Of a stretch of 64,000 nucleotides of DNA, positions 3,165-34,400 are shown in pieces. Position numbers and translations under genes: made by a program. The notes beneath the pieces were generated by a model that saw nothing but the letters and a program-made list of their open reading frames with translations, was not told the origin of the DNA and did not search any database. Within the stretch, counting starts at the first letter, position 1. Each line of letters starts with the position of its first letter. Source of the stretch: Macrostomum lignano (taxonomy: Eukaryota); contig NIVC01001347.1 of the NCBI GenBank assembly GCA_002269645.1, positions 124,001 to 188,000 of the forward strand, read 5' to 3'.

Positions 3165-3270
3165 CTTATTGTCTGGTGGATGCTTGCTATTTGGGGATGC
3201 TATCTATCTGGGGGATGCTTTCTATCCGGGGGATGCTTGCAATCTGAGGGATGCTTGCCATCTGGGGATG
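3165..3270. repeat. 17-18-bp minisatellite GGGGGATGCTTGCTATCT (block 2, short)
   Basis: Same unit, with the same flanking junction sequences as block 1. Confidence 0.9.
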
Positions 3271-4824: not shown

Positions 4825-5205
4825 TATTGTCTGGTGGATGCTTGCTATTTGGGGATGCTATCTATCTGGGGGATGCTTGCTATCTGGGGGATGCTTGCAA
4901 TCTGGGGGATGCTTGCTATCTGGGGATGCTTGCTATCTGGGGGATGCTTGCTATCTGGGGATGCTTGCTATCTGGGGATGCTTGCTATCTGGGGGATGCT
5001 TGCTATCTGGGGATGCTTGCTATCTGGGGGATGCTTGCTATCTGGGGGATGCTTGCTATCTGGGGGATACTTGCTATCTGGGGATGCTTGCTATCTGGGG
5101 GATGCTTGCTATTTGGGTGATGCTTGCTATCTGGGGATGCTTGCTATCCGGGGGATGCTTGCAATCTGGGGGATGCTTGCTATCTGGGGGATGCTTGCTG
5201 TTTTG
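4825..5205. repeat. 17-18-bp minisatellite GGGGGATGCTTGCTATCT (block 3)
   Basis: About 20 tandem copies with the same flanks as blocks 1 and 2. Confidence 0.95.
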
Positions 5206-7817: not shown

Positions 7818-9029
7818 ATGTCGAGTTTATGCCTCAATATTTGGTTAGGATTGAACTGCACGCTTGTGGTATTAGTTCTGTTAAGCAATAGCGCCATACT
7901 TCACGTGGTGCATCGGAACAGAAATCTGCACACTACAGCCTATGCATTCATTTGCAACTTGGCCGTTTGCGATATGTGCTATGGACTCGGCATTGCATTC
8001 TTCACCATCACCGTGTACTATCCAAGCCTGGCCGAAAGCTTTACAGCCTGCCGATTTGCACTTGTCGCATTCTACGGATCGATCGGCTTTGCCACTGTTG
8101 GTATAGCACTGATCTCTGTTGAGCGTTGCATCGCGATAAAATGTGCAATTCATTACAATCGACTGCTAACCAGAGGCCGAGTGGCCCTACTAATAGGAGC
8201 ATCCCCAACTCTGTTCGTAGCCCTGGTGGCAGGAATTGTGTTTGGCTCAGCGAAAAAAATGACTCCTAATAGCGTCTGCGTGACGCGTGAGGTTCTACCA
8301 AGCTGGGCTATCGCACTGGCCTCCGCCTGCGTCATGGCGACACAACTAGCGTCAACGGCCTGTTACGTTGTAGTTTACCTGGTGGCCAGGAAGCAACGAA
8401 ATCGCATCAGTCAGGAGTTGAACTACCTAAGACGGTTAGCAGCAATGTCGGCACCTGCAGCTGCGCGTGGCAGAAGTTATAAACGTGAGATGTACCGTCG
8501 ACAGAGCTGGAGATTAACCGTCACAGTTGGATTCGTCCTGCTAGTGTTCTACGCATTTTGGGCGCCAACCTGGCTTATACAGCTGCTGCGTATCAAACAT
8601 ATTGACAATGAACTAACGCTAACGTTGGCTTACTTCAGCAGCAGCTACTCGACCATAAATAGCATAGCAAACATCTTCATTTACAGTTTCAAGACTAAAG
8701 AATTTCGCGAGTCGGCAAAGCGCACGTTTCTGGGCGTATTATTTAGCGACAGTCGGAAGAACAGTGACAAGAATACGAATGGTTGGAGTCTAAGACGAGA
8801 TACTGCGGTAGGTCTCACAACCGTCGGGCCGACAAGCTGGGCAGTGTTTGCTATTAGCTATGAAGCTGGCACGGCTGCCACCGCGGCTGCAGCAGCAGCC
8901 ACTGCCCAAACCGAAGCGTGGCAATCAAGCGGACCAAGCTCTTCAAATGAGGTAGCCACCGGGGAGGCTACCGATATGATTAAACTTGCACAAAAACCAT
9001 TGGGCATTGGGGCTTGCAAAGCCAATTAA
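7818..9029 (+). CDS. Intronless class A (rhodopsin-like) GPCR, nested antisense in the DAGL intron
   Basis: 403-aa ORF with 7 hydrophobic segments; TM2 NLAVCD, TM3 SVERCIAI (DRY variant), TM6 FWAP, TM7 NSIANIFIY, helix-8 KEFR. Confidence 0.9.
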   Translation: MSSLCLNIWLGLNCTLVVLVLLSNSAILHVVHRNRNLHTTAYAFICNLAVCDMCYGLGIAFFTITVYYPSLAESFTACRFALVAFYGSIGFATVGIALISVERCIAIKCAIHYNRLLTRGRVALLIGASPTLFVALVAGIVFGSAKKMTPNSVCVTREVLPSWAIALASACVMATQLASTACYVVVYLVARKQRNRISQELNYLRRLAAMSAPAAARGRSYKREMYRRQSWRLTVTVGFVLLVFYAFWAPTWLIQLLRIKHIDNELTLTLAYFSSSYSTINSIANIFIYSFKTKEFRESAKRTFLGVLFSDSRKNSDKNTNGWSLRRDTAVGLTTVGPTSWAVFAISYEAGTAATAAAAAATAQTEAWQSSGPSSSNEVATGEATDMIKLAQKPLGIGACKAN

Positions 9030-10283: not shown

Positions 10284-10861
10284 ACTAGACTTATTGAACT
10301 CTCTAAATTTTCAAATGAAATCATTTCGGGTTAATTCGGATAAACTAGACTTATTGAACTCTCTAAATTTTCAAATGAAATCATTTCGGGTTAATTCGGA
10401 TAAACTAGACTTATTGAACTCTCTAAATTTTCAAATGAAATCATTTCGGGTTAATTCGGATAAACTAGACTTATTGAACTCTCTAAATTTTCAAATGAAA
10501 TCATTTCGGGTTAATTCGGATAAACTAGACTTATTGAACTCTCTAAATTTTCAAATGAAATCATTTCGGGTTAATTCGGATAAACTAGACTTATTGAACT
10601 CTCAAAATTTTCAAATGAAATCATTTCGGGTTAATTCGGATAAACTAGACTTATTGAACTCTCTAAATTTTCAAATGAAATCATTTCGGGTTAATTCGGA
10701 TAAACTAGACTTATTGAACTCTCTAAATTTTCAAATGAAATCATTTCGGGTTAATTCGGATAAACTAGACTTATTGAACTCTCAAAATTTTCAAATGAAA
10801 TCATTTCGGGTTCATTCGGATAAACTAGACTTATTGAACTCTCTAAATTTTCAAATGAAAT
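10284..10861. repeat. Near-perfect 60-bp tandem repeat, about 9.6 copies
   Basis: Unit ACTAGACTTATTGAACTCTCTAAATTTTCAAATGAAATCATTTCGGGTTAATTCGGATAA aligns line by line in the 60-nt display. Confidence 0.97.
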
Positions 10862-11454
10862 GATTTAGGGTCTTTTATGGCTACGGAGACCTCTCCAAGT
10901 TGGACCTCTTTCGAAAGTTTGTTTCTGCATATCCGGCCATGACCTGACCTGAAGGACCTGACAAGAGTTGCTTCATCCAACGTGAACAATTTCCACGGAC
11001 AGGTCAGTAACTGAAAACTTAGCAAGATCTGAACGACGCCACGTCCGTCAGTGTGTGACACTAAGTATCATCCTTATGTACTGTTTTTGCCATAAAAACT
11101 GCTTCGTTTTGTTATCAGACTACATGTCTGTGCTCGTTTTATTGTATGAAATTATGTTTTAAACAAAATTGAAAAGTTTAAAATTCGTGCGAAAATTTAC
11201 CGCACGATCGCGTTATGGTGAAAGTCGGCTTTTTGGCCATAGACAATGGATAGTAGAGGTCTTTTGAGAAGACTTGGCCATATTTAAATGTTTAATTTCA
11301 TACGAGCGTAGCTATTTTGAAAACACTTAACAGCCACTTTTACGTTTTTCTATTGTTTTTTAACTGGCAGCATAACAAACAACCGTTGTAAATTTTGCTT
11401 GAGCGATTTATTAGTTTATCGTACATTTCAGGCTAGTGTTGTATGTGTTGTATG

Positions 11455-14500: not shown

Positions 14501-15344
14501 GGTGAGGTAAAGGACATCAGCTCAAGCTATCATCTTCTGGGGCAAGCACAGAGCGTACTAAGACCGTGTCATAGCGTCGCGCGCAGAGTTGACTTAGAAA
14601 TTAAACAACACACCAGCTCCCTATCGTCCACTCGTATCCCGGATCCAATCCTGAAAATTCTCAACTAGCAATCTACCGCGGCAGTCCCACTTCAACTGCG
14701 CGATAGAGCATAGCTTAGGAGGCTGGCCAGAGTCAGGGAAGAGCCTTTTTCGCCAACTTCCGTCCGATTCGATATTTTTCTTAGTTCTACTGACTAGATT
14801 CTCATACAGAAATTCACCCCTATCCCAGCTAGTCCCAACAGGGACCTGAATTGCGGAAGCGAGACCAACACGGAAGGAAGATGAAAAATAGAGGCTGGCG
14901 AACTGATATTGCAAGAAGGATCCAGTGGGATGACTTTATGGGTAGAAAAGACTTCGGGGACGGATTAGGGCGATAATTCGTTCTGCTAGCATTACTTTGA
15001 CTTAGCCGAAATGCTTGGAATCTCCTCTGCTATTGCAAGCTAGTCTAGGAGAAAATAAAAGACCATATACCACTCATTTCCCACGTCAGAATTTAAGACG
15101 ATATCTATTCGCACCAAAGCATGTGAAAATACAGACGTCAAAGAAAATTCTGGCAGTAATATTCGAGGCGCTGCCAATTTTCGTCAACTATTTTACTAGC
15201 CGAATTTCCGACGCATCTCGTAATTCACCAAGTGGCTTTTACTGGGAAATATTCTATTAAATTTATTTAACTCACCCACATTGATAAAGGCTATAAGCTA
15301 AGCGTTAGAATTGTCCAAGAAACTGCTTTGTCGCGCCTCACAAA

Positions 15345-17467
15345 GGGGATGTCAACTTAAGCACCAGAATGGAGCCCGAAGTTCAGCTCCGGACCAAACC
15401 GACTGCAATCGATAACTTGTCGGCCCAGACGACTAGAATCGCCGAGACATCCCATCCGGCTCCCTTCCTTGGGGTCCCAGGGATAAAGGGGATAAAATGG
15501 GGATCTCATGTCAACTTAAGGCTCTGGAATGGAGCCCGAAGTTCAGCTCCGGACCAAACCGACTGCAATCGATAACTTGTCGGCCCAGACGACTAGAATC
15601 GCCGAGACATCCCATCCGGCTCCCTTCCTTGGGGTCCCAGGGGATAAAGGGGATAAAATGGGGATCTCATGTCAACTTAAGGCTCTGGAATGGAGCCCGA
15701 AGTTCAGCTCCGGACCAAACCGACTGCAATCGATAACTTGTCGGCCCAGACGACTAGAATCGCCGAGACATCCCATCCGGCTCCCTTCCTTGGGGTCCCA
15801 GGGGATAAAGGGGATAAAATGGGGATCTCATGTCAACTTAAGGCTCTGGAATGGAGCCCGAAGTTCAGCTCCGGCCCAAACCGACTGCAATCGATAAGTT
15901 GTCGGCCCAGACGACTAGAATCGCCGAGACATCCCATCCGGCTCCCTTCCTTGGGGTCCCAGGGGATAAAGGGGATAAAATGGGGATCTCATGTCAACTT
16001 AAGGCCCTGGAATGGAGCCCGAAGTTCAGCTCCGGACCAAACCGACTGCAATCGATAACTTGTCGGCCCAGACGACTAGAATCGCCGAGACATCCCATCC
16101 GGCTCCACTCCTTGGGGTCCCAGGGGATAAAGGGGATAAAATGGGGATCTCATGTCAACTTAAGGCCCTGGAATGGAGCCCGAAGTTCAGCTCCGGACCA
16201 AACCGACTGCAATCGATAACTTGTCGGCCCAGACGACTAGAATCGCCGAGACATCCCATCCGGCTCCCTTCCTTGGGGTCCCAGGGGATAAAGGGGATAA
16301 AATGGGGATCTCATGTCAACTTAAGGCTCTGGAATGGAGCCCGAAGTTCAGCTCCGGACCAAACCGACTGCAATCGATAACTTGTCGGCCCAGACGACTA
16401 GAATCGCCGAGACATCCCATCCGGCTCCCTTCCTTGGGGTCCCAGGGGATAAAGGGGATAAAATGGGGATCTCATGTCAACTTAAGGCTCTGGAATGGAG
16501 CCCGAAGTTCAGCTCCGGACCAAACCGACTGCAATCGATAACTTGTCGGCCCAGACGACTAGAATCGCCGAGACATCCCATCCGGCTCCCTTCCTTGGGG
16601 TCCCAGGGGATAAAGGGGATAAAATGGGGATCTCATGTCAACTTAAGGCTCTGGAATGGAGCCCGAAGTTCAGCTCCGGACCAAACCGACTGCAATCGAT
16701 AACTTGTCGGCCCAGACGACTAGAATCGCCGAGACATCCCATCCGGCTCCCTTCCTTGGGTCCCAGGGGATAAAGGGGATAAAATGGGGATCTCATGTCA
16801 ACTTAAGGCTCTGGAATGGAGCCCGAAGTTCAGCTCCGTACCAAACCGACTGCAATCGATAACTTGTCGGCCCAGACGACTAGAATCGCCGAGACATCCC
16901 ATCCGGCTCCCTTCCTTGGGGTCCCAGGGGATAAAGGGGATAAAATGGGGATCTCGTGTCAACTTAAGGCTCTGGAATGGAGCCCGAAGTTCAGCTCCGG
17001 ACCAAACCGACTGCAATCGATAAGTTGTCGGCCCAGACGACTAGAATCGCCGAGACATCCCATCCGGCTCCCTTCCTTGGGGTCCCAGGGGATAAAGGGG
17101 ATAAAATGGGGATCTCATGTCAACTTAAGGCTCTGGAATGGAGCCCGAAGTTCAGCTCCGGACCAAACCGACTGCAATCGATAACTTGTCGGCCCAGACG
17201 ACTAGAATCGCCGAGACATCCCATCCGGCTCCCTTCCTTGGGGTCCCAGGGGATAAAGGGGATAAAATGGGGATCTCGTGTCAACTTAAGGCTCTGGAAT
17301 GGAGCCCGAAGTTCAGCTCCGGACCAAACCGACTGCAATCGATAAGTTGTCGGCCCAGACGACTAGAATCGCCGAGACATCCCATCCGGTTTCAAGTGAC
17401 GAAGCTCTATTCAATTCGAATATCGCATTAGCGGGTGTATTTTATTTCAGCTATTATACATTGATTG
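15345..17467 (+). repeat. Left TIR: 13 copies of a 161-bp unit plus an ~80-bp unique inner segment
   Basis: Period 161 (ORF starts 15529, 15690, 15851...). The inner segment CCGGTTTCAAGTGACGAAGCTCTATTC...CTATTATACATTG mirrors 21247-21330. Confidence 0.95.
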
Positions 17468-18073
17468 TTAAGTAATAAAAATGATTTGCTCGTATCGAAA
17501 CCTGTTAAAAATGCTGATCTGGAAACTCAGTTTGAAAAAATTAACTTGTAAATTCGTTTGGTTATTAGTAAGCAGAACTTTTGACGATAAACCGAAACCA
17601 TGTATATTGGTAAAATAAAGAATATCACGCAAGGCTGTACAAGTTATGACGTAATGGATACAAAGCATATCATGCAAAGCTGTACAAGTTATCAAAGTAA
17701 TAAAAACAAAGCATGTCATGCAAAGCAGCACACGTTTTTAAGCAAATAAAGTAACGCCTCTCACGCAAAGCTTAGTAAAATCATAATTGCAAAAGTTTCT
17801 CAGTCCTAAGAAACGGTTTTTGGGTTTAAGTTCTTTGCTTCAGTAAAAAATACTTCCAATTTTTAGTTAATTGTGAGTCTAAAAGAAATTGAAACAACTA
17901 ATTCAAAGCTTTTGTTATTTGATGTCAGTCTGAATTATCTTCACATGTAACCTATGGTACGTAAAGAATGCGTGAGATGACATTGTTTCTTAATCTGCAT
18001 GTCCTTTAAAATCTGCAATACAAAACGTACAGTACACTCGCTTAAAACAATTGTATTTTCGCTAAAAATGCTT

Positions 18074-21010
18074 TTACGAGTTTAAAAGTGCAACGAGCAC
18101 GATGCACTCAGGCTCACGTACGAACGGGTTATAGTCTGACGTAACTTTCATGTCGTCAATTCTCGTCCACACACAGCTCAGTACGCTTGCTGTGAAATGT
18201 CCCGATTTCAGTCGGTTTCCATGGTGTGATATTGTGGCCACTGGCTTACCAAGTGTAGAAACACCCCCTGACCTTGAAGAAAAGCTTACAGGAGTTTGAA
18301 GCTTAAGGTGGCCATCCATACTAGCACGATCAAGATATATCAGGGTAAACTTTCCAGGTGTTACTACGATCTCTTGATTACAATCGCCCAGGCAATTGGC
18401 GTCCGAACATTTCACTACCTGAGGAGCGACAAAAGCGCAGAAGATTTTGTCTAAACTGACAATTGAGCGCTCAAATTGACAGAGAGGAATGCAAATCACT
18501 CTGTTATCGATTGTGCCAACAGGAACTTCAGCACTTGTGCGCTGGCAATCCCGACAAGTTTGAATGAGTGAAAATTCTGTGAAAGCATCTGATGACAGAA
18601 ATTCCAGATGTATTAGAAGCGTTTGAACAAATTCGTTGACGCAATGGTGCTGATTTGTTTGAAATGAATCTGGATGTTGCAACCGAACTGCCGTTAACAG
18701 TGGAGTGACTGTTGCAGACCGCTGTTGCATCTCCGTCAGAAGACGAAGCAGCTCTCGATGGACTTGGTCGTTGCTAGTCTCTTTTAAAATGCATCCATTA
18801 GAATGCAGGCAGAGAAACAATTGCACTGCTGCATTTGCGTAGCACTGCAGGCCATTATTTGGCAACCCAAATAACTTCTTCGGCGAATTCAATGAACCAG
18901 TAGCATTTGAACTGTGCCTCTGTTCATCTTGCTGCGATTCAGCACTGTCTCTGCGAGGTGCATTTGGAGCTGGATGACCACCAGATTGATCATTGTAAAG
19001 ATTGGCAATCAGTGCTTTTGGCAAAGCACTGTCAATAAATCGGAAGCTGCTGCCGCACATGTTGTAGCTTTCGGGGTGATATGCATAACAGCCTAGCATT
19101 CTAACCACAGCCATAACATGACTGTCACACCCTGCTGTCCTGCTTCCGGCCTTTGAGGATGAAAAGTAGCCATGCAGACGCAGCAGCCCCGAGTCACGAA
19201 ATCCGAATCGGTTACCACTTGCAGTTTCGCAAATACGAAGGACAACTCGGTAAGTTTTTGACCGATGACGGGAATGAAGAACGGCTAAATATATCCAAGA
19301 TGGCCTCCATTCTCCAAACTTACTGCTCCACCCCTTTGGTGGCGCTCGCTGATGAAACTTCCAGCATTTTAAATGGCTTGGCAGTTCAGAAATCAACAAT
19401 TCGAAATCGCGCCACGAGTCTCCAGCGTAGCTACTGAGCACCTCATGAACTCTGACGTTTTCGATGTAGCGTTTTGACTGAAGAACGTGGTATGGGCCGA
19501 TGCTAAGCTCTTCCAGATTTCTTTCGTCAACGCTGGGGAACCCTGAACTTTCAGGGTCCAGGGGATCCACTGCTGTCCATTTTCGGGTAGAACTCGTTGG
19601 TATTCGAGTCAAATCGCAATTGTACTCAAGTTGCTCAATTTCGTCTAGCTCATTCGCAATGAAAAGACGTTTAGCAAAGTTCCGTCCGTATTCGAACATG
19701 GAGCAATCTGACCATGACGGCGGCAGACTCCTTGTAGCTTGAAATCCTGGATGCGAACGGTTGAATTTTGCCATGGAGTTTTCAATAACAACATCGAGCC
19801 GGCTGCGTTCGGTAAACTCTGGGGCATGTAGCCATTGGTACGGCTCCTGTCGCTCATTTATGCATTTGTCCTGCTTGATTGCAGCAAAGCTACATTCTAC
19901 GAGATAACGGAAAAGCGTAGCGCAGCGACTTGTATTTGCTTCGATTGATGTAAGCTTTCCTGGTATTGATCGGTCACCAACAGGAGCCTCATTATTTACA
20001 AATTCAAACTGCTCGTTTAGAACTCGGTCACCTGGACTGGTCGGAAATAGAAGCGTCGTGCAGCCTTTACTATTAGTCTCTATAAAGTCGCGGAAGTTAA
20101 CCGAAGTTGGTGAACAAAGTTGGTGGCTGTAACCTTTGTCGAAAATGCCAATAACGTGATAATCTTTCTGTACAGAGCACAGAATGCGCAACAAAATGGG
20201 CTCTATTAGTCCTTCAGCCTCCATGTCAACTTGCATTGCAGTCAAATTCCCATCGCCCATTGTTGGCGAGATAGCGGCGGTAAGGGGAGCGGTGTAGATA
20301 ATTTTTCCTCTACTGTTGACAACCGCCATTTTTTTGTTCACATTCATTTTCTTGCCGGAAAAGTAAGTTCGAATTTGCGTGTGGTGTGAGCTGCTCTTAG
20401 GGAGATAAAAGTAAGTATGATCACCCACTAGAAGAACAAGCTTCTTGCCTTTGAGTAGTGTGTGAAATACACCGAGAATAAATTGATCGCGTACTACATT
20501 TTCCTCAAGCAGAGTCTGAATCGGAGTCGACGCTATCGACCTCGGTTGATATGGATCCCGTAGGTACTGCTCCTTGGCAATCTCCCAAAAAATGTCGCAT
20601 GCTCTTTGGGCAGAAATGTTGAAATCGAAAGCTAATGATTGAAAGCTGCAACCTTGGCGAAGCTTCTTCAGGTACAAAAATATTCGAGATGGCTTTGTCA
20701 AAATACGAAGGCGAGATACTTCTGGTAACATTTCTGAGAAGCTATCGAAATCACTATAGCTAAGACCGCAAATACGTTTGAACTCCTTCTCATTTGCGGT
20801 TCGTGGAAAAAGGTTTGGGTTCAAAAAAACTTTCACATACTTACCACCGACCGCAAGAAACTGAAGCGCCTCTCGTGCGTTTCTCGGAGGCGCGAAGGCT
20901 CCAGACGATTCAGATGAGCAGCGACCACATCTAGTCGTTTCGAGATGTCGGTTCAAATTGGCTGCTTTGCTGAATTGATGACCACATTGAGAGCAAGTAA
21001 AATCGGACAT
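18074..21010 (-). CDS. Transposase-deubiquitinase fusion: C2H2 finger + HTH + DDE_Tnp_4-like transposase + degenerate SWIM-like finger + peptidase C19 (USP) domain, 978 aa from the first ATG
   Basis: CSQC-x12-H-x5-C. HTH RIFLYLKKLRQGCSFQSLAFDFNIS. DDE: GDHTYFYLPKSS, IFDKGY, RYLVECSFAAIK. USP Cys box GLPNNGLQCYANAAVQLF and His box HHGNRLKSGHFTA...WTRIDDMKV. The ORF track starts at TTG 21019; the first ATG is at 21010. Confidence 0.9.
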   Translation of the reverse strand: MSDFTCSQCGHQFSKAANLNRHLETTRCGRCSSESSGAFAPPRNAREALQFLAVGGKYVKVFLNPNLFPRTANEKEFKRICGLSYSDFDSFSEMLPEVSRLRILTKPSRIFLYLKKLRQGCSFQSLAFDFNISAQRACDIFWEIAKEQYLRDPYQPRSIASTPIQTLLEENVVRDQFILGVFHTLLKGKKLVLLVGDHTYFYLPKSSSHHTQIRTYFSGKKMNVNKKMAVVNSRGKIIYTAPLTAAISPTMGDGNLTAMQVDMEAEGLIEPILLRILCSVQKDYHVIGIFDKGYSHQLCSPTSVNFRDFIETNSKGCTTLLFPTSPGDRVLNEQFEFVNNEAPVGDRSIPGKLTSIEANTSRCATLFRYLVECSFAAIKQDKCINERQEPYQWLHAPEFTERSRLDVVIENSMAKFNRSHPGFQATRSLPPSWSDCSMFEYGRNFAKRLFIANELDEIEQLEYNCDLTRIPTSSTRKWTAVDPLDPESSGFPSVDERNLEELSIGPYHVLQSKRYIENVRVHEVLSSYAGDSWRDFELLISELPSHLKCWKFHQRAPPKGWSSKFGEWRPSWIYLAVLHSRHRSKTYRVVLRICETASGNRFGFRDSGLLRLHGYFSSSKAGSRTAGCDSHVMAVVRMLGCYAYHPESYNMCGSSFRFIDSALPKALIANLYNDQSGGHPAPNAPRRDSAESQQDEQRHSSNATGSLNSPKKLFGLPNNGLQCYANAAVQLFLCLHSNGCILKETSNDQVHRELLRLLTEMQQRSATVTPLLTAVRLQHPDSFQTNQHHCVNEFVQTLLIHLEFLSSDAFTEFSLIQTCRDCQRTSAEVPVGTIDNRVICIPLCQFERSIVSLDKIFCAFVAPQVVKCSDANCLGDCNQEIVVTPGKFTLIYLDRASMDGHLKLQTPVSFSSRSGGVSTLGKPVATISHHGNRLKSGHFTASVLSCVWTRIDDMKVTSDYNPFVREPECIVLVALLNS

Positions 21011-21246
21011 TACTAGCAAGTATAAAACGCAATCTGCAACAAATCTGCACCTGTCATAAAACTAAGTAAGAAAAACTGACCAAAACCTTAACTTCATTAA
21101 TATATCACTTAAAATATATCACTTAAACTAATGCTACAAATACTTGACGCACAGTATCAAAAATCTCTCGCCTAAAGTGGTCAAATCAAAACCGCGAAAA
21201 CATTCTCAAAAATCCGGAAAAATTAAACGACGGAAATATTACAATG

Positions 21247-24200
21247 CAAACAATATATAATAGCTAAAATAAAATACACCCGCTAATGCGATATTCGAAT
21301 AGAATAGAGCTTCGTCACTTGAAACCGGATGGGATGTCTCGGCGATTCTACTCGTCTGGGCCGACAAGTTATCGATTGCAATCGGTTTGGTCCGGAGCTG
21401 AACTTCGGGCTCCATTCCAGAGCCTTAAGTTGACATGAGATCCCCATTTTATCCCCTTTATCCCCTGGGACCCCAAGGAAGGGAGCCGGATGGGATGTCT
21501 CGGCGATTCTAGTCGTCTGGGCCGACAAGTTATCGATTGCAGTCGGTTTGGTCCGGAGCTGAACTTCGGGCTCCATTCCAGAGCCTTAAGTTTACATGAG
21601 ATCCCCATTTTATCCCCTTTATCCCCTGGGACCCCAAGGAAGGGAGCCGGATGGGATGTCTCGGCGATTCTAGTCGTCTGGGCCGACAAGTTATCGATTG
21701 CAGTCGGTTTGGTCCGGAGCTGAACTTCGGGCTCCATTCCAGAGCCTTAAGTTGACATGAGATCCCCATTTTATCCCCTTTATCCCCTGGGACCCCAAGG
21801 AAGGGAGCCGGATGGGATGTCTCGGCGATTCTAGTCGTCTGGGCCGACAAGTTATCGATTGCAGTCGGTTTGGTCCGGAGCTGAACTTCGGGCTCCATTC
21901 CAGGGCCTTAAGTTGACATGAGATCCCCATTTTATCCCCTTTATCCCCTGGGACCCCAAGGAAGGGAGCCGGATGGGATGTCTCGGCGATTCTAGTCGTC
22001 TGGGCCGACAAGTTATCGATTGCAGTCGGTTTGGTCCGGAGCTGAACTTCGGGCTCCATTCCAGAGCCTTAAGTTGACATGAGATCCCCATTTTATCCCC
22101 TTTATCCCCTGGGACCCCAAGGAAGGGAGCCGGATGGGATGTCTCGGCGATTCTAGTCGTCTGGGCCGACAAGTTATCGATTGCAATCGGTTTGGTCCGG
22201 AGCTGAACTTCGGGCTCCATTCCAGAGCCTTAAGTTGACATGAGATCCCCATTTTATCCCCTTTATCCCCTGGGACCCCAAGGAAGGGAGCCGGATGGGA
22301 TGTCTCGGCGATTCTAGTCGTCTGGGCCGACAAGTTATCGATTGCAATCGGTTTGGTCCGGAGCTGAACTTCGGGCTCCATTCCAGAGCCTTAAGTTGAC
22401 ATGAGATCCCCATTTTATCCCCTTTATCCCCTGGGACCCCAAGGAAGGGAGCCGGATGGGATGTCTCGGCGATTCTAGTCGTCTGGGCCGACAAGTTATC
22501 GATTGCAATCGGTTTGGTCCGGAGCTGAACTTCGGGCTCCATTCCAGAGCCTTAAGTTTACATGAGATCCCCATTTTATCCCCTTTATCCCCTGGGACCC
22601 CAAGGAAGGGAGCCGGATGGGATGTCTCGGCGATTCTAGTCGTCTGGGCCGACAAGTTATCGATTGCAGTCGGTTTGGTCCGGAGCTGAACTTCGGGCTC
22701 CATTCCAGAGCCTTAAGTTGACATGAGATCCCCATTTTATCCCCTTTATCCCCTGGGACCCCAAGGAAGGGAGCCGGATGGGATGTCTCGGCGATTCTAG
22801 TCGTCTGGGCCGACAAGTTATCGATTGCAGTCGGTTTGGTCCGGAGCTGAACTTCGGGCTCCATTCCAGGCCTTAAGTTGACATGAGATCCCCATTTTAT
22901 CCCCTTTATCCCCTGGGACCCCAAGGAAGGGAGCCGGATGGGATGTCTCGGCGATTCTAGTCGTCTGGGCCGACAACTTATCGATTGCAGTCGGTTTGGG
23001 CCGGAGCTGAACTTCGGGCTCCATTCCAGAGCCTTAAGTTGACATGAGATCCCCATTTTATCCCCTTTATCCCCTGGGACCCCAAGGAAGGGAGCCGGAT
23101 GGGATGTCTCGGCGATTCTAGTCGTCTGGGCCGACAAGTTATCGATTGCAATCGGTTTGGTCCGGAGCTGAACTTCGGGCTCCATTCCAGAGCCTTAAGT
23201 TGACATGAGATCCCCATTTTATCCCCTTTATCCCCTGGGACCCCAAGGAAGGGAGCCGGATGGGATGTCTCGGCGATTCTAGTCGTCTGGGCCGACAAGT
23301 TATCGATTGCAGTCGGTTTGGTCCGGAGCTGAACTTCGGGCTCCATTCCAGAGCCTTAAGTTGACATGAGATCCCCATTTTATCCCCTTTATCCCCTGGG
23401 ACCCCAAGGAAGGGAGCCGGATGGGATGTCTCGGCGATTCTAGTCGTCTGGGCCGACAAGTTATCGATTGCAGTCGGTTTGGTCCGGAGCTGAACTTCGG
23501 GCTCCATTCCAGAGCCTTAAGTTGACATGAGATCCCCATTTTATCCCCTTTATCCCCTGGGACCCCAAGGAAGGGAGCCGGATGGGATGTCTCGGCGATT
23601 CTAGTCGTCTGGGCCGACAAGTTATCGATTGCAGTCGGTTTGGTCCGGAGCTGAACTTCGGGCTCCATTCCAGAGCCTTAAGTTGACATGAGATCCCCAT
23701 TTTATCCCCTTTATCCCCTGGGACCCCAAGGAAGGGAGCCGGATGGGATGTCTCGGCGATTCTAGTCGTCTGGGCCGACAAGTTATCGATTGCAGTCGGT
23801 TTGGTCCGGAGCTGAACTTCGGGCTCCATTCCAGGGCCTTAAGTTGACATGAGATCCCCATTTTATCCCCTTTATCCCCTGGGACCCCAAGGAAGGGAGC
23901 CGGATGGGATGTCTCGGCGATTCTAGTCGTCTGGGCCGACAACTTATCGATTGCAGTCGGTTTGGGCCGGAGCTGAACTTCGGGCTCCATTCCAGAGCCT
24001 TAAGTTGACATGAGATCCCCATTTTATCCCCTTTATCCCCTGGGACCCCAAGGAAGGGAGCCGGATGGGATGTCTCGGCGATTCTAGTCGTCTGGGCCGA
24101 CAAGTTATCGATTGCAATCGGTTTGGTCCGGAGCTGAACTTCGGGCTCCATTCCAGAGCCTTAAGTTGACATGAGATCCCCATTTTATCCCCTTTATCCC

Positions 24201-24980
24201 CTGGGACCCCAAGGAAGGGAGCCGGATGGGATGTCTCGGCGATTCTAGTCGTCTGGGCCGACAAGTTATCGATTGCAGTCGGTTTGGTCCGGAGCTGAAC
24301 TTCGGGCTCCATTCCAGAGCCTTAAGTTGACATGAGATCCCCATTTTATCCCCTTTATCCCCTGGGACCCCAAGGAAGGGAGCCGGATGGGATGTCTCGG
24401 CGATTCTAGTCGTCTGGGCCGACAAGTTATCGATTGCAGTCGGTTTGGTCCGGAGCTGAACTTCGGGCTCCATTCCAGAGCCTTAAGTTGACATGAGATC
24501 CCCATTTTATCCCCTTTATCCCCTGGGACCCCAAGGAAGGGAGCCGGATGGGATGTCTCGGCGATTCTAGTCGTCTGGGCCGACAAGTTATCGATTGCAG
24601 TCGGTTTGGTCCGGAGCTGAACTTCGGGCTCCATTCCAGAGCCTTAAGTTGACATGAGATCCCCATTTTATCCCCTTTATCCCCTGGGACCCCAAGGAAG
24701 GGAGCCGGATGGGATGTCTCGGCGATTCTAGTCGTCTGGGCCGACAAGTTATCGATTGCAGTCGGTTTGGTCCGGAGCTGAACTTCGGGCTCCATTCCAG
24801 AGCCTTAAGTTGACATGAGATCCCCATTTTATCCCCTTTATCCCCTGGGACCCCAAGGAAGGGAGCCGGATGGGATGTCTCGGCGATTCTAGTCGTCTGG
24901 GCCGACAAGTTATCGATTGCAGTCGGTTTGGTCCAGAGCTGAACTTCGGGCTCCATTCTGGTGCTTAAGTTGACATCCCC
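21247..24980 (-). repeat. Right TIR: 23 copies of the same 161-bp unit in inverted orientation plus the unique inner segment
   Basis: Reverse complement of the left arm; period 161 (ORF starts 21576, 21737, ... 24795). Confidence 0.95.
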
Positions 24981-26385
24981 TTTGGCCATTTAGCTCGTAG
25001 TAATCTCTAGGTTCGGTCAATATCCTCCTGATATTGTTTTTAACATCCTTTCAAGCTGTCATTTGTTCTTTGTTTCTGAAAATAGCTGACACTGAAAAGC
25101 GGAAATTAAAACCTTCTACGATTACTTTCCTGTGGGTTTGCTACTAAAATTGCTGCTTTTAACATGCATTTATGAAAATTACCGCTTCTATAAATATCGC
25201 GTACATTGTACTTGCTAGATATATCATTATTGATTTGCCAAATGTGGAAAAAACTCATCTATCAAGCAATTTAATAGACGGAGTTTTCATTTATGTAAAC
25301 TACTCAAGCGCAATGTGGAATTATCCGTCAATATAGACTTTCAACCCGAATTTTCCATTAATTACGGTGTAGAAGGTGGTCCCAATATCTGACAAGAAAT
25401 AGGTAAACATTCCGTATCTAGCAAGTAGCATTTGTACACACTCAGAAGTAACTGATACATTCTGTATCAGCTATCTGTGGAATAAAAATTTAGACGTTAT
25501 AAAGCATTACACTTATACTAGTAGTTCGTCACTAGACAGGAAAATTCTTTTTCTGCATGCTCCAAATCAAGAAGACAGTCATTAAATTCTTCGAAAGGCG
25601 AAGAGACGCATCTACCTAAGAATAGATTTTAGACTTGTTTTAATGATACGGCCCCTATGGAGGCATAAAATAAATCCACTTATACAGGTTTTTACTCCAC
25701 TAATCAGCTTTGAAAATTGAGACACAAAAATGGTCATCAATTTCAGAATTCAAAAGAAAATTACCCAACCTTACATTAGATCAAAGGACTACTGTTTTTA
25801 AGGTAGAGCCTGCAATTAGGTAACACTAAAAAGATAGCGAATTGAACCTATAAAAGAGCATAGGTGCCATTAAGGATTAATTGAGGGCCTTTAGTTAGGG
25901 AATAAATTAGCCCAAAACTGAAATTCCATATAAAAGATAGTAAAATTTCACTTGATAAAATTTTATAGTAGCATTCAATAAGGAATTTGGAGGGCTCAAT
26001 TTGAAAGCGGATCGCAAAAGCCAACAATCTGACACGGCTGCTGCTTTTAAATAATTCTGCACGAAACCTGTCAATCAATCTTTGAACAGGTACTGTAGAT
26101 GCCATTTAAAACTGCTGCTTTTTCAATCAAACTGCTATATCGACTCTGTTATAGGTTACAACTCTGCACTTTTATAGTTACTAAATCAGAATAGACATAG
26201 AGCCTACAGCCAAAAAAGCAATTTAGTGTCTGTAATATTCGAAAAGCTCTCCGCTATAGCTCGTAGAATCGCTGCACATAAAAGTTGGCGCATCGAACGG
26301 CCACTTAATCTGTCATTTGTTCTAAAGCAAAGTGCCTGGTAGATAGCTTTTTTTGCTTCGCCTAGTTGGCATGACACAAGCAAAT

Positions 26386-27425: not shown

Positions 27426-28625
27426 TCACACAAAGCCACTGTCCATGCGAGAGTGGCGCGGCGACTCGCAACAGGCGACATTGGCGGACACGGAGTCCTC
27501 AAAGCCGCACCGCAGTGGCTGGGCAGCTTCCGGACCTTTTTCAACTGTGCCCGAAGAACCGTGCTGTTGAAGCCGCTGTCCAATAGAGCAATGACCCTCG
27601 GCAGTGCATCGGAGGCCGCAGGACACTTTGCGATTGTTGACTTTCGGTTGCAGACAATTCATACGGATGTGCAAAAAGCCAAGCAGTTGGATTCGGAAGT
27701 TGCGGCACATAACAAAATAGATGGCAAAGTTCAAGCCGGAGTCGATACTAATTAATAGCGACTTGATCTCGCCAAGAATGTTTAACCAGTCTGGCATATT
27801 CGAGCTTAGTGACATTGACGATGTTAAATTCGCAATGCTGCAGAATAGTTCGTAGAATAAGTGAGGAAATGACAAACCAAAGAAAGTTCCAGACACAAGC
27901 AGCAGAGTTTTTGTCGCTTTTAGATTGCTGTCTACATGAGCTGGCAGATCTGTCCACTGGCGCCGGCGTCGGGTAAGGTGGCTGGTCATCACGCAGGTTA
28001 GAGTCATAACTACAATAATCGGAATTCCGGTGCTAAGCACTACCTCGATAGAGATGGTTACGTCGAAAATGTACTCTTCATTAACGCTCGTAGTTATTAA
28101 GTCCATAGCGATGGTGAAAGCGGCCGAGAACGCGGTCAAGCCGAACAGAAGGGCAGCCTGCTGGCGATAGTTAAACTCAATAGGAGCAGACAGAGGTCGA
28201 ACGACTACAGAATACCTAGCCGATGTCATAGCTACAATCCACCAACTGCGAGCTAGATATGAAACTTTCCAGGCTGTGGTGAACCATTTCAGATAGTAGC
28301 GGCAGTGCGGATGACTGGCTTGATTGGAATGGGTGACCGTGTCAGCCACGAATGCCATAGCGCTGCGAGCGGACAGGCACAGGTTCATAAAGACATCGAT
28401 TGCTACAAGCAGGCTGAAGCCTTTGGCCTGAGTAGACGACTGGAACACGGCGGCCAGCACTACGCAATTGAGCAGTGCGCTCAACGAGCACACAGCCAAG
28501 CGGATCAGATGACTGGCTGGCGAACCCAGCAAACAGGTGCTGTTGTCAAATGCTGGTAAAGACGGACTAACAATAAGGATGGTGCTTTGGACAGTAGCCA
28601 GCTCCATGGAGTAAGTTGCTGTCAT
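27426..28625 (-). CDS. Intronless class A GPCR (peptide-receptor-like orphan), nested in the DAGL intron on the same strand
   Basis: 399-aa ORF with 7 hydrophobic segments; TM1 LLNCVVL, TM2 LVAID, TM3 TSARYSVVVRPL, TM5 GIP, TM6 LSFP, TM7 DSGLNFAIYF, helix-8 RNFR. Confidence 0.85.
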   Translation of the reverse strand: MTATYSMELATVQSTILIVSPSLPAFDNSTCLLGSPASHLIRLAVCSLSALLNCVVLAAVFQSSTQAKGFSLLVAIDVFMNLCLSARSAMAFVADTVTHSNQASHPHCRYYLKWFTTAWKVSYLARSWWIVAMTSARYSVVVRPLSAPIEFNYRQQAALLFGLTAFSAAFTIAMDLITTSVNEEYIFDVTISIEVVLSTGIPIIVVMTLTCVMTSHLTRRRRQWTDLPAHVDSNLKATKTLLLVSGTFFGLSFPHLFYELFCSIANLTSSMSLSSNMPDWLNILGEIKSLLISIDSGLNFAIYFVMCRNFRIQLLGFLHIRMNCLQPKVNNRKVSCGLRCTAEGHCSIGQRLQQHGSSGTVEKGPEAAQPLRCGFEDSVSANVACCESPRHSRMDSGFV

Positions 28626-29244
28626 GGCTAACTTTCAAGCGAATTAAGATCGATACGCAAGTGTGGAGGAGGAACACGCTTTCAGCCTTTCGTTTCGCTT
28701 TTAAATGATAAAGCCGATTCACCAGGGAGGACATCCTACCCGATTTCTAGCGCCTGCATTGGCTAGCTGGAGGCCGCAGCCAATCTGAACTAATCGCAAA
28801 AAAATTCAATGTCTTTCTGAAGCCCTATTTTATCCAAAGAAGCATGAAATAATGTCATGCATTTTGCAAGTTTTACTGCAATCTAGCCAATGGGATTTGA
28901 ATTCTTCATAAATCACAGGAAAACAGCAACGTTTCAAGAGAAACCTTTTTAGTCGATTTCGATTTTTTCTTGGAATTTCTCTCCAGTGCTACATGCCATA
29001 GTACCTACATCGTATTTGCAGCGCTTAATTGAATCAGTCAGCTGCTGAGTGCAAATCAGATAGGCTAGTATTTTTGCATGTATTGCATTCTCTCGGGACA
29101 GACAGTACTAACACTTATACATGTACAACCAATACCAAAGAGCGTAAAGCAAAATTCTGAGCCTTATATCACGGAAAGAAGGCGTACGTATATACAAGAC
29201 TAAAGTCCAATTTATAAGCGAAGCGTAAAAATAAATAAAGCGGC

Positions 29245-29835
29245 CAAGCCTAAACAGACGTGAAGATCAGGGAGGGTGTAAACGAACCAAGCCTGAATAG
29301 GCGTGAGGATCAGGAGGGTACAAAGGGGCCAAGCCTGAAGAGACGTGAGGATCAGGGATGGTATAAAGGGGCCAAGCCTGAAGAGACGTGAGGATCAGGG
29401 AGGGTATAAAGGGGCCAAGCCTGAATAGACGTGAAGATCAGGGAGGGTGTAAATGTAAACGAACCAAGCCAAGCCTGAATAGACGTGAGGATCAGGAAGG
29501 TATAAAGGGGCCAAGCCTGATGAGACGTGAGGATCAGGGAGGGTATAAAGGGGCCAAGCTTGAATAGACGTGAAGATCAGGGAGGGTGTAAACGAATCAA
29601 GCCAAGCCTGAAGAGACGTGAGGATCAGGGAGGGTATAAAGGGGCCAAGCCTGATGAGACGTGAGGATCAGGGAGGGTATAAAGGGGCCAAGCCTGAATA
29701 GACGTGAAGATCAGGGAGGGTGTAAACGAGCCAAGCCAAGCCTGAATAGACGTGAGGATCAGGAGAGTATAAAGGGGCCAAGCCTGAAGAGACGTGAGGA
29801 TCAGGGAGGGTATAAAAGGGGCCAAGACTGAAGAG
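29245..29835. repeat. ~43-bp minisatellite (CCAAGCCTGAAGAGACGTGAGGATCAGGGAGGGTATAAAGGGG)
   Basis: About 13 tandem copies just inside the DAGL exon 3 donor. Confidence 0.92.
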
Positions 29836-29903
29836 AGGATCAGAGACGGTAGTCTCTGTGTAAATCAATATTAACAGCAACGCAGTCCAAGTTCAGTACT
29901 CAC

Positions 29904-34084: not shown

Positions 34085-34400
34085 AAACTCTTCTATTCTT
34101 TCTTCTTTCTCTTCTCCTTTCTCTTATCTTTTCTTTTCTTTTCCCTCTTATCTCTTCTTTCTTATCCTTCCTCTTTTCACTCTTCTTTTTACTCTTTCCT
34201 CTGCTCTCTTATTCTGCCTCTCTTCATTCTTTTATCTTATCCTTCCTCTCTTTATTATATTCTCTATTCTCTTATCTTTTCCTTTTTCTCTTTATTCTTT
34301 TCTCTACTCTCTTATCTTTTTTCTCTGCTATTTTCTCTTTTCTTTACTCTCTCTATTTAACTCTCTTTTATGTTTTTTTATTTCATCTTTAGTTTCCTTT
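34085..34400. repeat. Pyrimidine-rich (TC/TCT) low-complexity tract
   Basis: Directly visible; gives the spurious F/L/S ORF at 34082-34360. Confidence 0.9.

What the first reader, a model, noticed from the sequence alone, without database searches (positions are those of the whole stretch)
18074..21010. DNA transposase fused to an apparently active ubiquitin-specific protease (USP/C19)
Seen: one uninterrupted 978-aa ORF between TIRs. The N-terminal part carries C2H2, HTH and a complete D-D-E triad (GDHTY, IFDKGY, RYLVE). The C-terminal ~270 aa have a USP Cys box (GLPNNGLQCYANA; oxyanion Asn and catalytic Cys), CxxC...CxxxxC finger cysteines (CRDC, CSDANC) and a His box (HHGNRLKSGHF...WTRIDD; catalytic His and Asp). 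Known: other eukaryotic transposons capture Ulp1/C48 or OTU proteases (e.g. MULE, CACTA, Zisupton, Helitron). I do not recall a well-characterised PIF/Harbinger-ISL2EU-type transposase with a C-terminal C19 USP. Inference: the element may deubiquitinate its own transposase or chromatin at target sites (e.g. H2A/H2B-ub) to evade degradation or silencing. This is the best candidate for an undescribed system in the window.
Basis: partly seen in the sequence, partly recalled or inferred. Interest (0 to 1): 0.9.

Follow-up and report, generated by a model that had tools for sequence, protein, structure and literature searches.

The report
Spy-like DNA transposon carrying a deubiquitinase
An apparently intact 9.6-kb cut-and-paste transposon in an animal genome encodes a transposase fused to a ubiquitin-specific protease with all catalytic residues in place, and at least ten distantly related transposase lineages carry the same protease, so it is probably part of how these elements work.

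Summary
Window 18074-21010 (minus strand) is one 978-aa ORF inside a 9,636-bp element (15345-24980). The element is bounded by long inverted repeats built from a 161-bp tandem unit.

The protein reads: C2HC zinc finger, HTH, DDE core (D197/D291/E372, conserved in 49-50 of 50 relatives), a conserved C-terminal domain, a disordered linker, then a compact USP domain. The USP domain passes Pfam's UCH threshold (37.5 bits against 23.9). Its model (pLDDT 88) matches USP18/USP2/USP46 structures at E about 1e-16. It keeps N718, C723, H938, D952 and four zinc-ribbon cysteines.

The element is neither ISL2EU nor Harbinger. It has no target-site duplication under any choice of boundary, lies between AAA and TTT, has a single ORF, and its nearest outgroup has the published Spy DDE spacing. 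It belongs to a separate long-spacing, Spy-like clade.

The USP association recurs in at least ten lineages less than 50% identical to each other, once with the USP upstream of the DDE core. A canonical Spy-type relative carries a Ulp1 protease at its C-terminus instead.

I found no paper describing a USP in a DDE transposon. UCH, OTU and VTD domains are reported in Helitron-like elements. What the protease does is inferred, not shown.

The parts
15345..24980 (-). Whole transposon, 9,636 bp; the gene is on the minus strand
   Evidence: The terminal 23-mer is found only at 15345-15367 (+) and 24958-24980 (-). Inverted-repeat arms come and the end sequences.
15342..15344 (.). AAA immediately outside the left end. 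Its partner is TTT at 24981-24983. This is either a Spy-type AAA|TTT target or the outermost 3 bases of the inverted repeat.
   Evidence: Both flanks are unique in the window, so there is no empty site to decide between the two readings.
24981..24983 (.). TTT immediately outside the right end
15345..17477 (+). Left long terminal inverted repeat: the terminus, 12.7 copies of the 161-bp unit (15349-17389), and about 88 bp of unique inner sequence
   Evidence: Each unit carries GGGGAT motifs and a near-copy of the terminal sequence (GGGGATCTCATGTCAACTTAAGG against the terminal GGGGATGTCAACTTAAGC).
21237..24980 (-). Right long terminal inverted repeat: about 88 bp of unique inner sequence, 22.7 copies of the 161-bp unit (21325-24976), and the terminus
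   Evidence: The inner unique segments match at 80 of 88 positions.
18074..21010 (-). Single ORF of 978 aa: transposase-USP fusion protein (stop codon at 18074-18076)
20927..21001 (-). N-terminal C2HC/C2H2-type zinc finger, aa 4-28 (FTCSQCGHQFSKAANLNRHLETTRC)
   Evidence: Pfam zf-C2H2 gives 18.6 bits, below its cut-off. The same pattern is in P0001. N-terminal C2H2 hits are also seen in P0003, P0004, P0005 and P0046, and P0201 shows the same pattern by eye.
20585..20701 (-). Helix-turn-helix, aa 104-142 (HTH_Tnp_4-like)
   Evidence: 22.7 bits against a cut-off of 27. 23 of 50 relatives match HTH_Tnp_4. The region is helical with pLDDT above 90 in the model.
19871..20443 (-). DDE catalytic core, aa 190-380. 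Codons: D197 = 20420-20422, D291 = 20138-20140, E372 = 19895-19897. Spacing is D(93)D(80)E.
   Evidence: The triad columns are conserved 50/50, 49/50 and 50/50. D253, G293 and R368 are invariant. D197 lies in strand 190-202, D291 just after strand 284-289, and E372 in helix 355-378.
19061..19378 (-). Conserved C-terminal transposase domain, aa 545-650, with a degenerate copy of the family motif GYxCxCKxGxRTxGCCSHV. Here it reads GYFSSSKAGSRTAGCDSHV, so the CxC pair is lost.
   Evidence: The sister family L001 shows the same loss (YSSSKAGSRTAGCDCHV). pLDDT is above 90.
18869..18979 (-). Disordered, Ser/Pro/Gln-rich linker, aa 678-714
   Evidence: pLDDT is below 50 over aa 678-718.
18086..18868 (-). 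USP (peptidase C19) domain, aa 715-975. Codons: oxyanion N718 = 18857-18859, catalytic C723 = 18842-18844, H938 = 18197-18199, D952 = 18155-18157. Zinc-ribbon cysteines: CRDC at 18545-18556 and CSDANC at 18392-18409.
   Evidence: Pfam UCH 37.5 bits against 23.9. AlphaFold2 pLDDT 88.1, pTM 0.88. Foldseek matches USP18, USP2, USP46, USP35 and USP12 at E about 1e-16, TM about 0.7. The family profile matches PDB USPs at E down to 4e-35.

Best explanation
This is a structurally intact, probably autonomous cut-and-paste DNA transposon of the PHIS (PIF/Harbinger-ISL2EU-Spy) superfamily. It belongs to a Spy-like clade that inserts without a target-site duplication.

Its single protein has these parts in order:
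- A DNA-binding head (zinc finger plus HTH). It most likely recognises the GGGGAT-containing 161-bp subterminal repeats.
- An RNase-H-like DDE core, which cuts and joins the DNA.
- A family-specific C-terminal domain.
- A flexible linker of about 40 residues.
- A compact USP deubiquitinase with its catalytic residues in place.

Proposed mechanism: the USP is an active isopeptidase held at the transpososome by the linker. It removes ubiquitin, or a ubiquitin-like modifier, from the transposase itself and its immediate partners. That protects the complex from ubiquitin-dependent degradation or extraction while it excises and integrates.

Shown: the architecture, the conservation of the catalytic residues, the fold, and the recurrence of the fusion.

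Inferred: enzymatic activity (about 0.7), a requirement for transposition (about 0.5), and self- or complex-protection as the specific role (about 0.35).
For: - The ORF and inverted repeats are intact.
- The DDE triad is conserved in 49-50 of 50 relatives and sits in the right secondary-structure elements.
- 31 of 50 relatives match DDE_Tnp_4.
- The USP domain passes Pfam's cut-off, has a confident model, has USP structures as its top matches, and matches PDB USP sequences as a profile.
- The catalytic Cys and His are kept in every transposon-borne copy that covers them, at 18-35% pairwise identity. The oxyanion Asn and the zinc-ribbon cysteines are mostly kept.
- The transposase-USP association is found in WIN, L001/P0007, P0014, P0010, P0022, P0033, P0046, P0083/P0181, P0069/P0197 and, in the opposite order, P0017/P0201.
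- USP-bearing members lie on both sides of the deepest split of the clade.
- A canonical Spy-type relative, P0127, carries a Ulp1/C48 protease at its C-terminus.
- GC and GC3 are the same in the two halves of the ORF.
- The linker is predicted to be disordered.
- Precedent for active transposon-encoded deubiquitinases: the VTD domains of Helitrons cleave ubiquitin chains in vitro (PMC9741609).
Against: - There is no biochemical, expression or transposition data.
- Only one copy is visible, so activity and copy number in the source genome are unknown.
- Several close relatives (P0003-P0006, P0073, P0050/P0078) have no USP, so the domain is dispensable in some lineages.
- The window subfamily replaces the canonical Asp of the QQD box with Cys (QHC). 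By my own knowledge of USP structures, that Asp helps hold the ubiquitin tail, so the substrate might not be ubiquitin.
- The SWIM-like CxC pair of the transposase is lost in this subfamily.
- Nothing distinguishes self-protection from action on chromatin or repair factors.
Confidence: 0.5

Rival explanations
1. The USP acts on the host, not on the transposase. It would strip ubiquitin from chromatin or repair and silencing factors at the donor or target site, for example H2A/H2B-ubiquitin, PCNA-ubiquitin, or ubiquitin/UBL marks needed for small-RNA-guided heterochromatin. That would steer break repair or escape silencing.
For: It rests on the same structural evidence for an active, tethered deubiquitinase. 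A SUMO-type protease (Ulp1/C48) at the C-terminus of a Spy-type relative fits interference with chromatin or SUMO-ubiquitin signalling as well as it fits self-protection. The authors of PMC9741609 speculate about overcoming a germline restriction for Helitron deubiquitinases.
Against: No histone- or nucleosome-binding module was detected. There is no evidence for any substrate. The covalent fusion with a short linker limits its reach to the transpososome's immediate surroundings.
Confidence: 0.25
2. The USP domain is a passenger or a pseudo-enzyme. It would be a captured host fragment kept by chance, or a ubiquitin-binding module without catalysis that merely tethers the transposase to ubiquitinated proteins.
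For: USP-less relatives exist inside the same clade. The QQD-box Asp is replaced by Cys in this subfamily. The USP part diverges faster than the transposase part: 35% against 51% identity to the sister family.
Against: The catalytic Cys and His survive in about ten lineages at 18-35% identity, and the reading frame is kept open over 260 codons in each. A neutral passenger would have decayed. The model is confident over the whole domain.
Confidence: 0.12
3. The locus is not a mobile element any more. It would be a domesticated transposase-USP host gene, or a single dead copy whose repeats are satellite DNA.
For: Only one copy is in the window. The exact protein is not on record elsewhere. The window is full of unrelated minisatellites. 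The P0033 relatives from different samples are the same sequence at 99.5-99.8% identity, with no evidence of different flanks.
Against: The gene sits exactly between two inverted arrays with identical unique 23-bp termini and matching inner unique segments, which is transposon anatomy. The sister copy L001 carries an in-frame stop and a frameshift, as decaying transposon copies do.
Confidence: 0.08
4. The USP is a processing protease that cuts the fusion protein itself, releasing the transposase from the protease.
For: The window protein has QSGG just before the linker (aa 675-678). From my own knowledge, some viral papain-like deubiquitinases cut after LxGG.
Against: The GG is not conserved in the sister family. 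Cellular USPs need a folded ubiquitin moiety, and no ubiquitin-like domain was detected in the ORF.
Confidence: 0.05

Closest known systems
Spy transposons (PHIS superfamily; Han et al. 2014, PMC4122938; Han et al. 2015, PMC4482050)
   Same: - DDE transposase related to IS5, Harbinger and ISL2EU.
- A single long ORF with an N-terminal HTH.
- No target-site duplication, and an insertion flanked by AAA and TTT.
- Inverted repeats that can be very long.
- Found in invertebrate animals.
- The nearest outgroup in my search has the published Spy spacing.
   Different: - DDE spacing is D(93)D(80)E against the published D(79-80)D(44-62)E.
- It has an N-terminal zinc finger.
- The termini read GGGGATGT rather than GGANNNNG.
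- The long inverted repeats are made of 161-bp tandem units; the paper saw no sub-repeat structure.
- It has a C-terminal USP domain, which neither paper mentions.
Helitron-like elements carrying OTU, VTD or UCH domains (PMC9741609; PMC11417382)
   Same: These are eukaryotic DNA transposons that stably carry a papain-fold deubiquitinase. The Pfam UCH domain itself is reported as a conserved domain of HLE2 subgroups. The VTD domains are proven deubiquitinases.
   Different: They are rolling-circle RepHel elements, not DDE cut-and-paste elements. The relationship between their UCH domains and this one was not tested.
Ulp1/C48 protease domains in MULE, CACTA and other DNA transposons (my own knowledge; Ginger/Ulp1 paper PMC2836005 listed but not read)
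   Same: A ubiquitin-like-modifier protease encoded by a cut-and-paste transposon, with an unknown role. The same theme appears in this very superfamily: P0127 is a Spy-type DDE with a C-terminal Peptidase_C48.
   Different: It is a different protease clan member (C48, specific for SUMO-type modifiers) and occurs in different transposase superfamilies.
Cellular USPs with small catalytic domains (USP18, USP2, USP12/46, USP15, USP21)
   Same: The fold, the Cys and His boxes, and the zinc ribbon in the fingers subdomain.
   Different: Only 15-20% identity, with no specific orthologue. The domain is very compact (about 260 aa). The QQD-box Asp is replaced by Cys. It is fused to a transposase.

Membership tests
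USP / peptidase C19 (Pfam UCH PF00443) | Profile match above the curated threshold | tested here: met
   37.5 bits against a cut-off of 23.9, aa 715-958. The family profile matches PDB USPs at E down to 3.8e-35.
USP / peptidase C19 (Pfam UCH PF00443) | Cys box with oxyanion Asn and catalytic Cys; His box with catalytic His and Asp/Asn | tested here: met
   N718, C723, H938 and D952/D953 align to the USP12 boxes. They are conserved in the transposon-borne relatives.
USP / peptidase C19 (Pfam UCH PF00443) | USP catalytic-domain fold | tested here: met
   AlphaFold2 model pLDDT 88.1, pTM 0.88. Foldseek top 50 hits are all USPs, E 6.5e-17 to 2.8e-14, TM 0.65-0.75.
USP / peptidase C19 (Pfam UCH PF00443) | Isopeptidase activity on ubiquitin or a ubiquitin-like modifier | not testable with these tools
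   This needs a Ub-AMC, Ub-PA or di-ubiquitin assay with a C723A control.
PHIS superfamily (DDE_Tnp_4 / IS5-related transposases) | D-D-E triad with the conserved D..K..D..D..P..R(3)E context on an RNase-H-like fold | tested here: met
   D197, D253, D291, R368-x3-E372 are conserved. The strand/strand/helix placement fits. 31 of 50 relatives match DDE_Tnp_4.
PHIS superfamily (DDE_Tnp_4 / IS5-related transposases) | Direct Pfam DDE_Tnp_4 / HTH_Tnp_4 match of the window protein itself | tested here: inconclusive
   There is no DDE_Tnp_4 hit. HTH_Tnp_4 scores 22.7 bits, below its cut-off of 27. The structural search of PDB gave only weak hits to Tn5, P-element and RAG1 (E at least 0.04). No PHIS structure appeared among the PDB matches.
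Spy group | Insertion between AAA and TTT without target-site duplication | tested here: inconclusive
   The flanks read AAA|GGGG...CCCC|TTT, and no 2-3 bp duplication exists under any boundary choice. AAA/TTT could instead be the outermost bases of the inverted repeat, and no empty site is available. This is one insertion only.
Spy group | A single long ORF encoding the transposase with an N-terminal HTH | tested here: met
   There is only one ORF between the inverted repeats.
Spy group | D(79-80)D(44-62)E spacing | tested here: not met
   The window has D(93)D(80)E and its clade has D(92-96)D(74-102)E, apart from P0073 (86) and P0046 (201) for the first spacing. The sister clade has mostly D(77-88)D(44-53)E.
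Spy group | Terminal consensus 5'-GGANNNNG-3' | tested here: not met
   The terminus is GGGGATGTCAAC. Only a 7-of-8 match is possible, and it is offset by 2 bases.
ISL2EU group | AT duplication in an A|AT|T target; THAP domain in the transposase; a second ORF with a YqaJ exonuclease | tested here: not met
   The flanks are AAA and TTT with no AT duplication. Pfam finds no THAP. There is no second ORF inside the element. Definitions are from PMC4482050.
PIF/Harbinger group | TWA target-site duplication; a second ORF with a Myb/SANT domain | tested here: not met
   There is no TWA duplication and no second ORF. Definitions are from PMC4482050.

The most novel reading that the evidence does not exclude
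A whole, previously unrecognised clade of Spy-like DDE transposases depends on a covalently tethered deubiquitinase for transposition. In sister lineages a SUMO-type protease would fill the same role. That would make removal of ubiquitin-family modifiers a core step of a cut-and-paste pathway, and would give the first simple, single-protein system in which the long-standing question of why transposons carry Ulp1, OTU, VTD or USP proteases can be answered by a point mutant.
Probability: 0.35. Interest if true: 0.78.

Novelty: new variant of a known kind. Interest (0 to 1): 0.6.

Why it matters
Proteases of the ubiquitin and SUMO systems have been noticed in MULE, CACTA, Helitron and other transposons for about twenty years. 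No function in transposition has been demonstrated for any of them.

Here the protease is fused in one reading frame to a conventional DDE transposase, in an element with defined ends. Standard excision and integration assays with C723A, USP-deletion and D197A variants could therefore test the role directly.

Two findings argue for selection rather than accident. The USP recurs in at least ten deep lineages, in two domain orders. A canonical Spy-type relative carries a Ulp1 protease at its C-terminus instead.

The work also defines a long-spacing sister clade of Spy transposases, abundant in marine metagenomes. And it adds a compact, divergent USP with an unusual Cys in the QQD box to the enzyme family.

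Tried and rejected
- Word-indexed protein search with the full protein found only one relative, P0001. The same search with the USP domain alone timed out and was not repeated.
- A single-sequence search of PDB with the USP domain found nothing at E of 0.01 or below and only marginal USP12 hits at E of 10 or below. The profile search was decisive instead.
- A structural search with the full-length model gave only insignificant hits to Tn5, P-element and RAG1.
- Two scans of metagenome contigs for further copies of the window family found nothing.
- The exact window protein is not on record elsewhere, so copy number and host are unknown.
- I looked for complete ends and AAA|TTT flanks in the related loci L001-L009. 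No convincing inverted repeats were seen. Some of these contigs run out in short tandem repeats.
- L002-L005 turned out to be one sequence seen in different samples, so they are not independent insertions.
- There is no paralogous empty site in the window.
- ISL2EU and Harbinger membership was rejected on target site, domains and ORF number.
- A Biopython bootstrap run timed out and was replaced by a numpy implementation.
- A tree of USP domains against a broad sample of cellular USPs was not built, for lack of reference sequences. Whether the transposon USPs share a single origin is therefore untested.
- dN/dS was not attempted. The nearest USP-bearing relative is only 35% identical in that domain.
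Full report
**1. What is in the sequence**

The minus strand of window 18074-21010 is one open reading frame of 978 codons from ATG (re-translated). At 46% G+C, a frame of this length without a stop is far beyond chance.

The ORF lies inside a 9,636-bp unit, 15345-24980. The two ends of that unit carry the same 23-mer, GGGGATGTCAACTTAAGCACCAG, in inverted orientation. This 23-mer occurs nowhere else in the window, and 0 matches are expected from shuffles.

Each end is a long inverted repeat:
- The left arm (15345-17477) holds 12.7 copies of a 161-bp unit.
- The right arm (21237-24980) holds 22.7 copies of the same unit.
- The arrays are 98-99% regular. In each arm the array is followed, on the inner side, by about 88 bp of unique sequence, and these two segments match at 80 of 88 positions.

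Each unit contains GGGGAT motifs and a near-copy of the terminal sequence. The many 92-229-aa ORFs listed inside the arrays are by-products of a repeat that has few stop codons.

**2. The protein**

Pfam places a UCH (USP-type, peptidase C19) domain at aa 715-958. It scores 37.5 bits against a gathering score of 23.9. Pfam also gives a sub-threshold HTH_Tnp_4 at aa 104-142 and a weak C2H2 finger at aa 4-25. It reports no DDE domain for this protein.

The DDE core becomes clear from relatives. An exhaustive HMMER search of 1.84 billion representative proteins found 131 relatives. In a 50-sequence alignment the columns of D197, D291 and E372 are D 50/50, D 49/50 and E 50/50. D253, G293 and R368 are invariant. 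Of these 50 proteins, 31 match DDE_Tnp_4 (best E 7e-25), 23 match HTH_Tnp_4 and 21 match DDE_Tnp_1.

An AlphaFold2 model built on that alignment is confident (pLDDT above 90) over aa 70-660. It puts D197 in a strand (190-202), D291 just after a strand (284-289) and E372 in a long helix (355-378), as expected for an RNase-H-like transposase. Residues 678-718 are predicted to be disordered. The PDB search with this model returned only weak similarity to Tn5, P-element and RAG1 transposases, and no Harbinger- or IS5-type structure appeared among the matches.

Downstream of the core, aa 545-650 form a family-specific domain whose consensus carries a SWIM-like motif, GYxCxCKxGxRTxGCCSHV. The window protein and its sister family have lost the CxC pair. 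This is therefore a subfamily trait, not a private defect.

**3. The USP domain**

A dedicated model of aa 701-978, built on a 12-sequence alignment, has mean pLDDT 88.1 and pTM 0.88. Its 50 best PDB matches are all USP catalytic domains, at E 6.5e-17 to 2.8e-14 and TM about 0.7. They include USP18, USP2, USP46, USP35, USP4, USP8, USP12 and USP21.

A sequence profile of the same alignment matches USP15, USP2, USP8, USP21, USP36 and USP12/46 at E between 4e-35 and 1e-27. No particular cellular USP stands out as an orthologue.

Aligned to USP12, GLPNNGLQC supplies the oxyanion Asn (N718) and the catalytic Cys (C723). SGHF...RIDD supplies H938 and D952/D953. The four cysteines of the fingers zinc ribbon are present (CRDC, CSDANC).

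There is one unusual feature. In this subfamily, and in P0007, P0014, P0069 and P0083, the canonical Asp of the QQD box is a Cys (QHC). From my own knowledge of USP structures, that Asp contacts the ubiquitin tail. The preferred substrate could therefore differ from ubiquitin.

**4. The fusion is a family trait, not an accident**

The same transposase-plus-USP arrangement occurs in the following proteins:
- P0010: 1048 aa, UCH at 748-1032.
- P0022: 955 aa, aligned to the query from aa 75 to 970 in one stretch at 25% identity.
- P0033: 1119 aa.
- P0046: 1639 aa.
- The P0083 cluster, with full-length P0181 of 1380 aa (core 319-941, USP 1068-1379).
- The P0069 cluster, with P0197 of 1010 aa.
- The sister family of the window element. 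It is split between contig L001 (transposase, 51% identity) and P0007 (USP, 35% identity), whose linker sequences overlap almost perfectly.

In P0201 the order is different: zinc finger, then USP (261-503), then HTH and DDE (582-888).

Every copy that covers the boxes keeps the catalytic Cys and His, at 18-35% pairwise identity.

A neighbour-joining tree of the transposase core splits the 50 sequences into two clades, with 100% bootstrap support. USP-bearing proteins lie on both sides of the deepest split inside the window's clade, interspersed with USP-less relatives such as P0003-P0006. This means either an ancestral fusion with repeated loss, or repeated gain. I did not test which.

In the other clade, P0127 carries a Ulp1/Peptidase_C48 domain (aa 759-920) at its C-terminus.

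GC and GC3 are the same in the transposase and USP halves of the window ORF.

Most relatives come from marine and other metagenome assemblies, including Tara Oceans. The closest named fragments are in gene models of the flatworm Macrostomum lignano.

**5. Which kind of transposon**

The left junction reads ...CTCAC AAA|GGGGATGTC and the right junction reads GACATCCCC|TTT GGCCAT....

Whether the boundary is placed before GGGG, before AAAGGGG or before CAAAGGGG, there is no 2-3 bp direct duplication. In the published classification of this superfamily (PMC4482050), the groups have these targets:
- Harbinger makes TWA duplications.
- ISL2EU makes AT duplications within A|AT|T.
- Pangu makes ANT duplications.
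- NuwaI makes CWG duplications.
- NuwaII makes TNA duplications within C|TNA|G.
- Only Spy makes no duplication, and it inserts between AAA and TTT (PMC4122938).

The element also has a single ORF with an N-terminal HTH, as Spy does. It lacks the THAP domain and YqaJ ORF of ISL2EU and the Myb ORF of Harbinger.

The sister clade in my tree has mostly D(77-88)D(44-53)E spacing, which matches the published Spy signature D(79-80)D(44-62)E. The window clade has D(92-96)D(74-102)E, apart from two members with other first spacings.

I therefore file the element as Spy-like, in a distinct long-spacing clade, and not as a member of Spy in the strict sense. Two caveats apply:
- The spacing and the GGANNNNG terminal consensus are not met.
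- The AAA/TTT could be the outermost bases of the inverted repeat. The 161-bp unit itself contains AAAGGGGAT, and no empty site is available to settle this.

**6. How it most likely works**

Shown: an intact transposon anatomy, and a protein with DNA-binding, DDE and USP modules joined by a flexible linker. Also shown: long-term conservation of the catalytic residues of both enzymes.

Inferred:
- The zinc finger and HTH bind the reiterated subterminal units.
- The DDE core makes blunt, duplication-free insertions as proposed for Spy (PMC4122938).
- The USP works in cis at the transpososome.

I commit to the reading that the USP is an active isopeptidase that keeps the transposase complex free of ubiquitin or a related modifier, and so protects it from degradation or extraction. 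The main rival is action on chromatin or repair factors at the site. My estimates are 0.7 for catalytic activity, about 0.5 for a contribution to transposition, and about 0.35 for self-protection as the specific role.

The existence of USP-less relatives shows that the function is not indispensable to every lineage.

**7. Comparison with what is known**

Transposon-encoded proteases of the ubiquitin family are a known theme:
- Ulp1/C48 in MULE, CACTA and others (my own knowledge).
- OTU and the biochemically proven VTD deubiquitinases in Helitrons (PMC9741609).
- The Pfam UCH domain as a stable domain of HLE2 Helitron-like elements (PMC11417382).

Nine literature searches found no report of a USP joined to a DDE cut-and-paste transposase, and no mention of ubiquitin or protease in the Spy paper. 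No other paper retrieved linked a protease to PHIS elements. Repbase and Dfam could not be searched. The family may exist there as an unannotated consensus.

**8. Verdict**

It needs correction on the transposon group and on the absence of precedent for USP-type domains in transposons. Its proposed mechanism is untested.

This is a new variant of a known kind: a transposon-encoded deubiquitinase, here a USP on a Spy-like DDE transposase. It comes with a conserved clade behind it and an unusually tractable experimental design.

Noticed in passing
P0127 / locus L009 1690-4482: A transposase with canonical Spy-type DDE spacing (D86 D44 E; DDE_Tnp_4 67.6 bits) carries a C-terminal Ulp1/Peptidase_C48 domain at aa 759-920. 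So, like the window protein, it has a C-terminal protease, but one specific for SUMO-type modifiers. No clear element ends were found in the contig.
   Followed up: partly
P0017 / P0201 (924 aa; ENA metagenome): This lineage has the opposite domain order: C2H2 finger, USP at 261-503 with Cys and His retained, then HTH and DDE at 582-888. That suggests domain shuffling or an independent capture.
   Followed up: partly
L002 1568-2932 (also L003-L005): A 454-aa ORF with C2H2-like fingers and no Pfam hit lies just upstream of the P0033 transposase-USP gene, on the same strand. It may be a separate DNA-binding protein or an upstream exon. The window element has no counterpart.
   Followed up: partly
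window 944-1151, 4830-5199 and 46066-47287: Other tandem arrays in the window have units built around GGGGATG or GGGGATCT (18-bp GGGGATGCTTGCTATCTG; 20-bp TGGCATTGGGGATCTGGGAA). This is the same core as the element's terminus and subterminal unit. The 3' end of relative L003 also runs into GGGGATT repeats. This may be coincidence or related binding-site arrays; I did not test it.
   Followed up: no
window 1-4768, 10284-10871, 29235-29836, 44318-44723, 50040-51158, 53097-53555, 54313-55808, 56589-57262, 61573-63857: The window is unusually dense in minisatellite arrays with periods of 16-60 bp, some several kb long. Examples are a 23-bp unit spanning 1374-4768 and a 21-bp unit spanning 62388-63857. 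The second underlies a spurious 474-aa ORF with collagen-like low-complexity hits.
   Followed up: no
window 7818-9029 (+) and 27426-28625 (-): Two intronless rhodopsin-family GPCR ORFs flank the element. The first scores 77.9 bits on 7tm_1. The second scores 26.5 bits, below the cut-off. An MRP-S31-like ORF lies at 40615-41460. Together these indicate an animal genome.
   Followed up: partly
window 32001-38000: A 6-kb stretch has only 28-31% G+C, against 38-55% elsewhere. There is also strong G-over-C skew (0.405) at 46001-48000, which coincides with the GGGGAT-type array.
   Followed up: no
P0018 (UniRef100_A0A1I8IYQ6) and P0011 (UPI0007A1D47C, 2393 aa): The only named relative is P0018, a Macrostomum lignano gene model. 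It is annotated as a DUF3480 protein and contains a stretch of roughly 100 aa that is 57% identical to aa 344-471 of the window transposase. P0011 is an unnamed UniParc entry with THAP and PRP4 domains and a similar stretch 55% identical to aa 365-470. Both are probably transposon fragments merged into host gene models.
   Followed up: partly
L001 900-3023: The sister-family copy carries an in-frame stop after codon 560 and a frameshift near nt 2741-2746. It is therefore a decaying copy, or has sequencing errors.
   Followed up: partly
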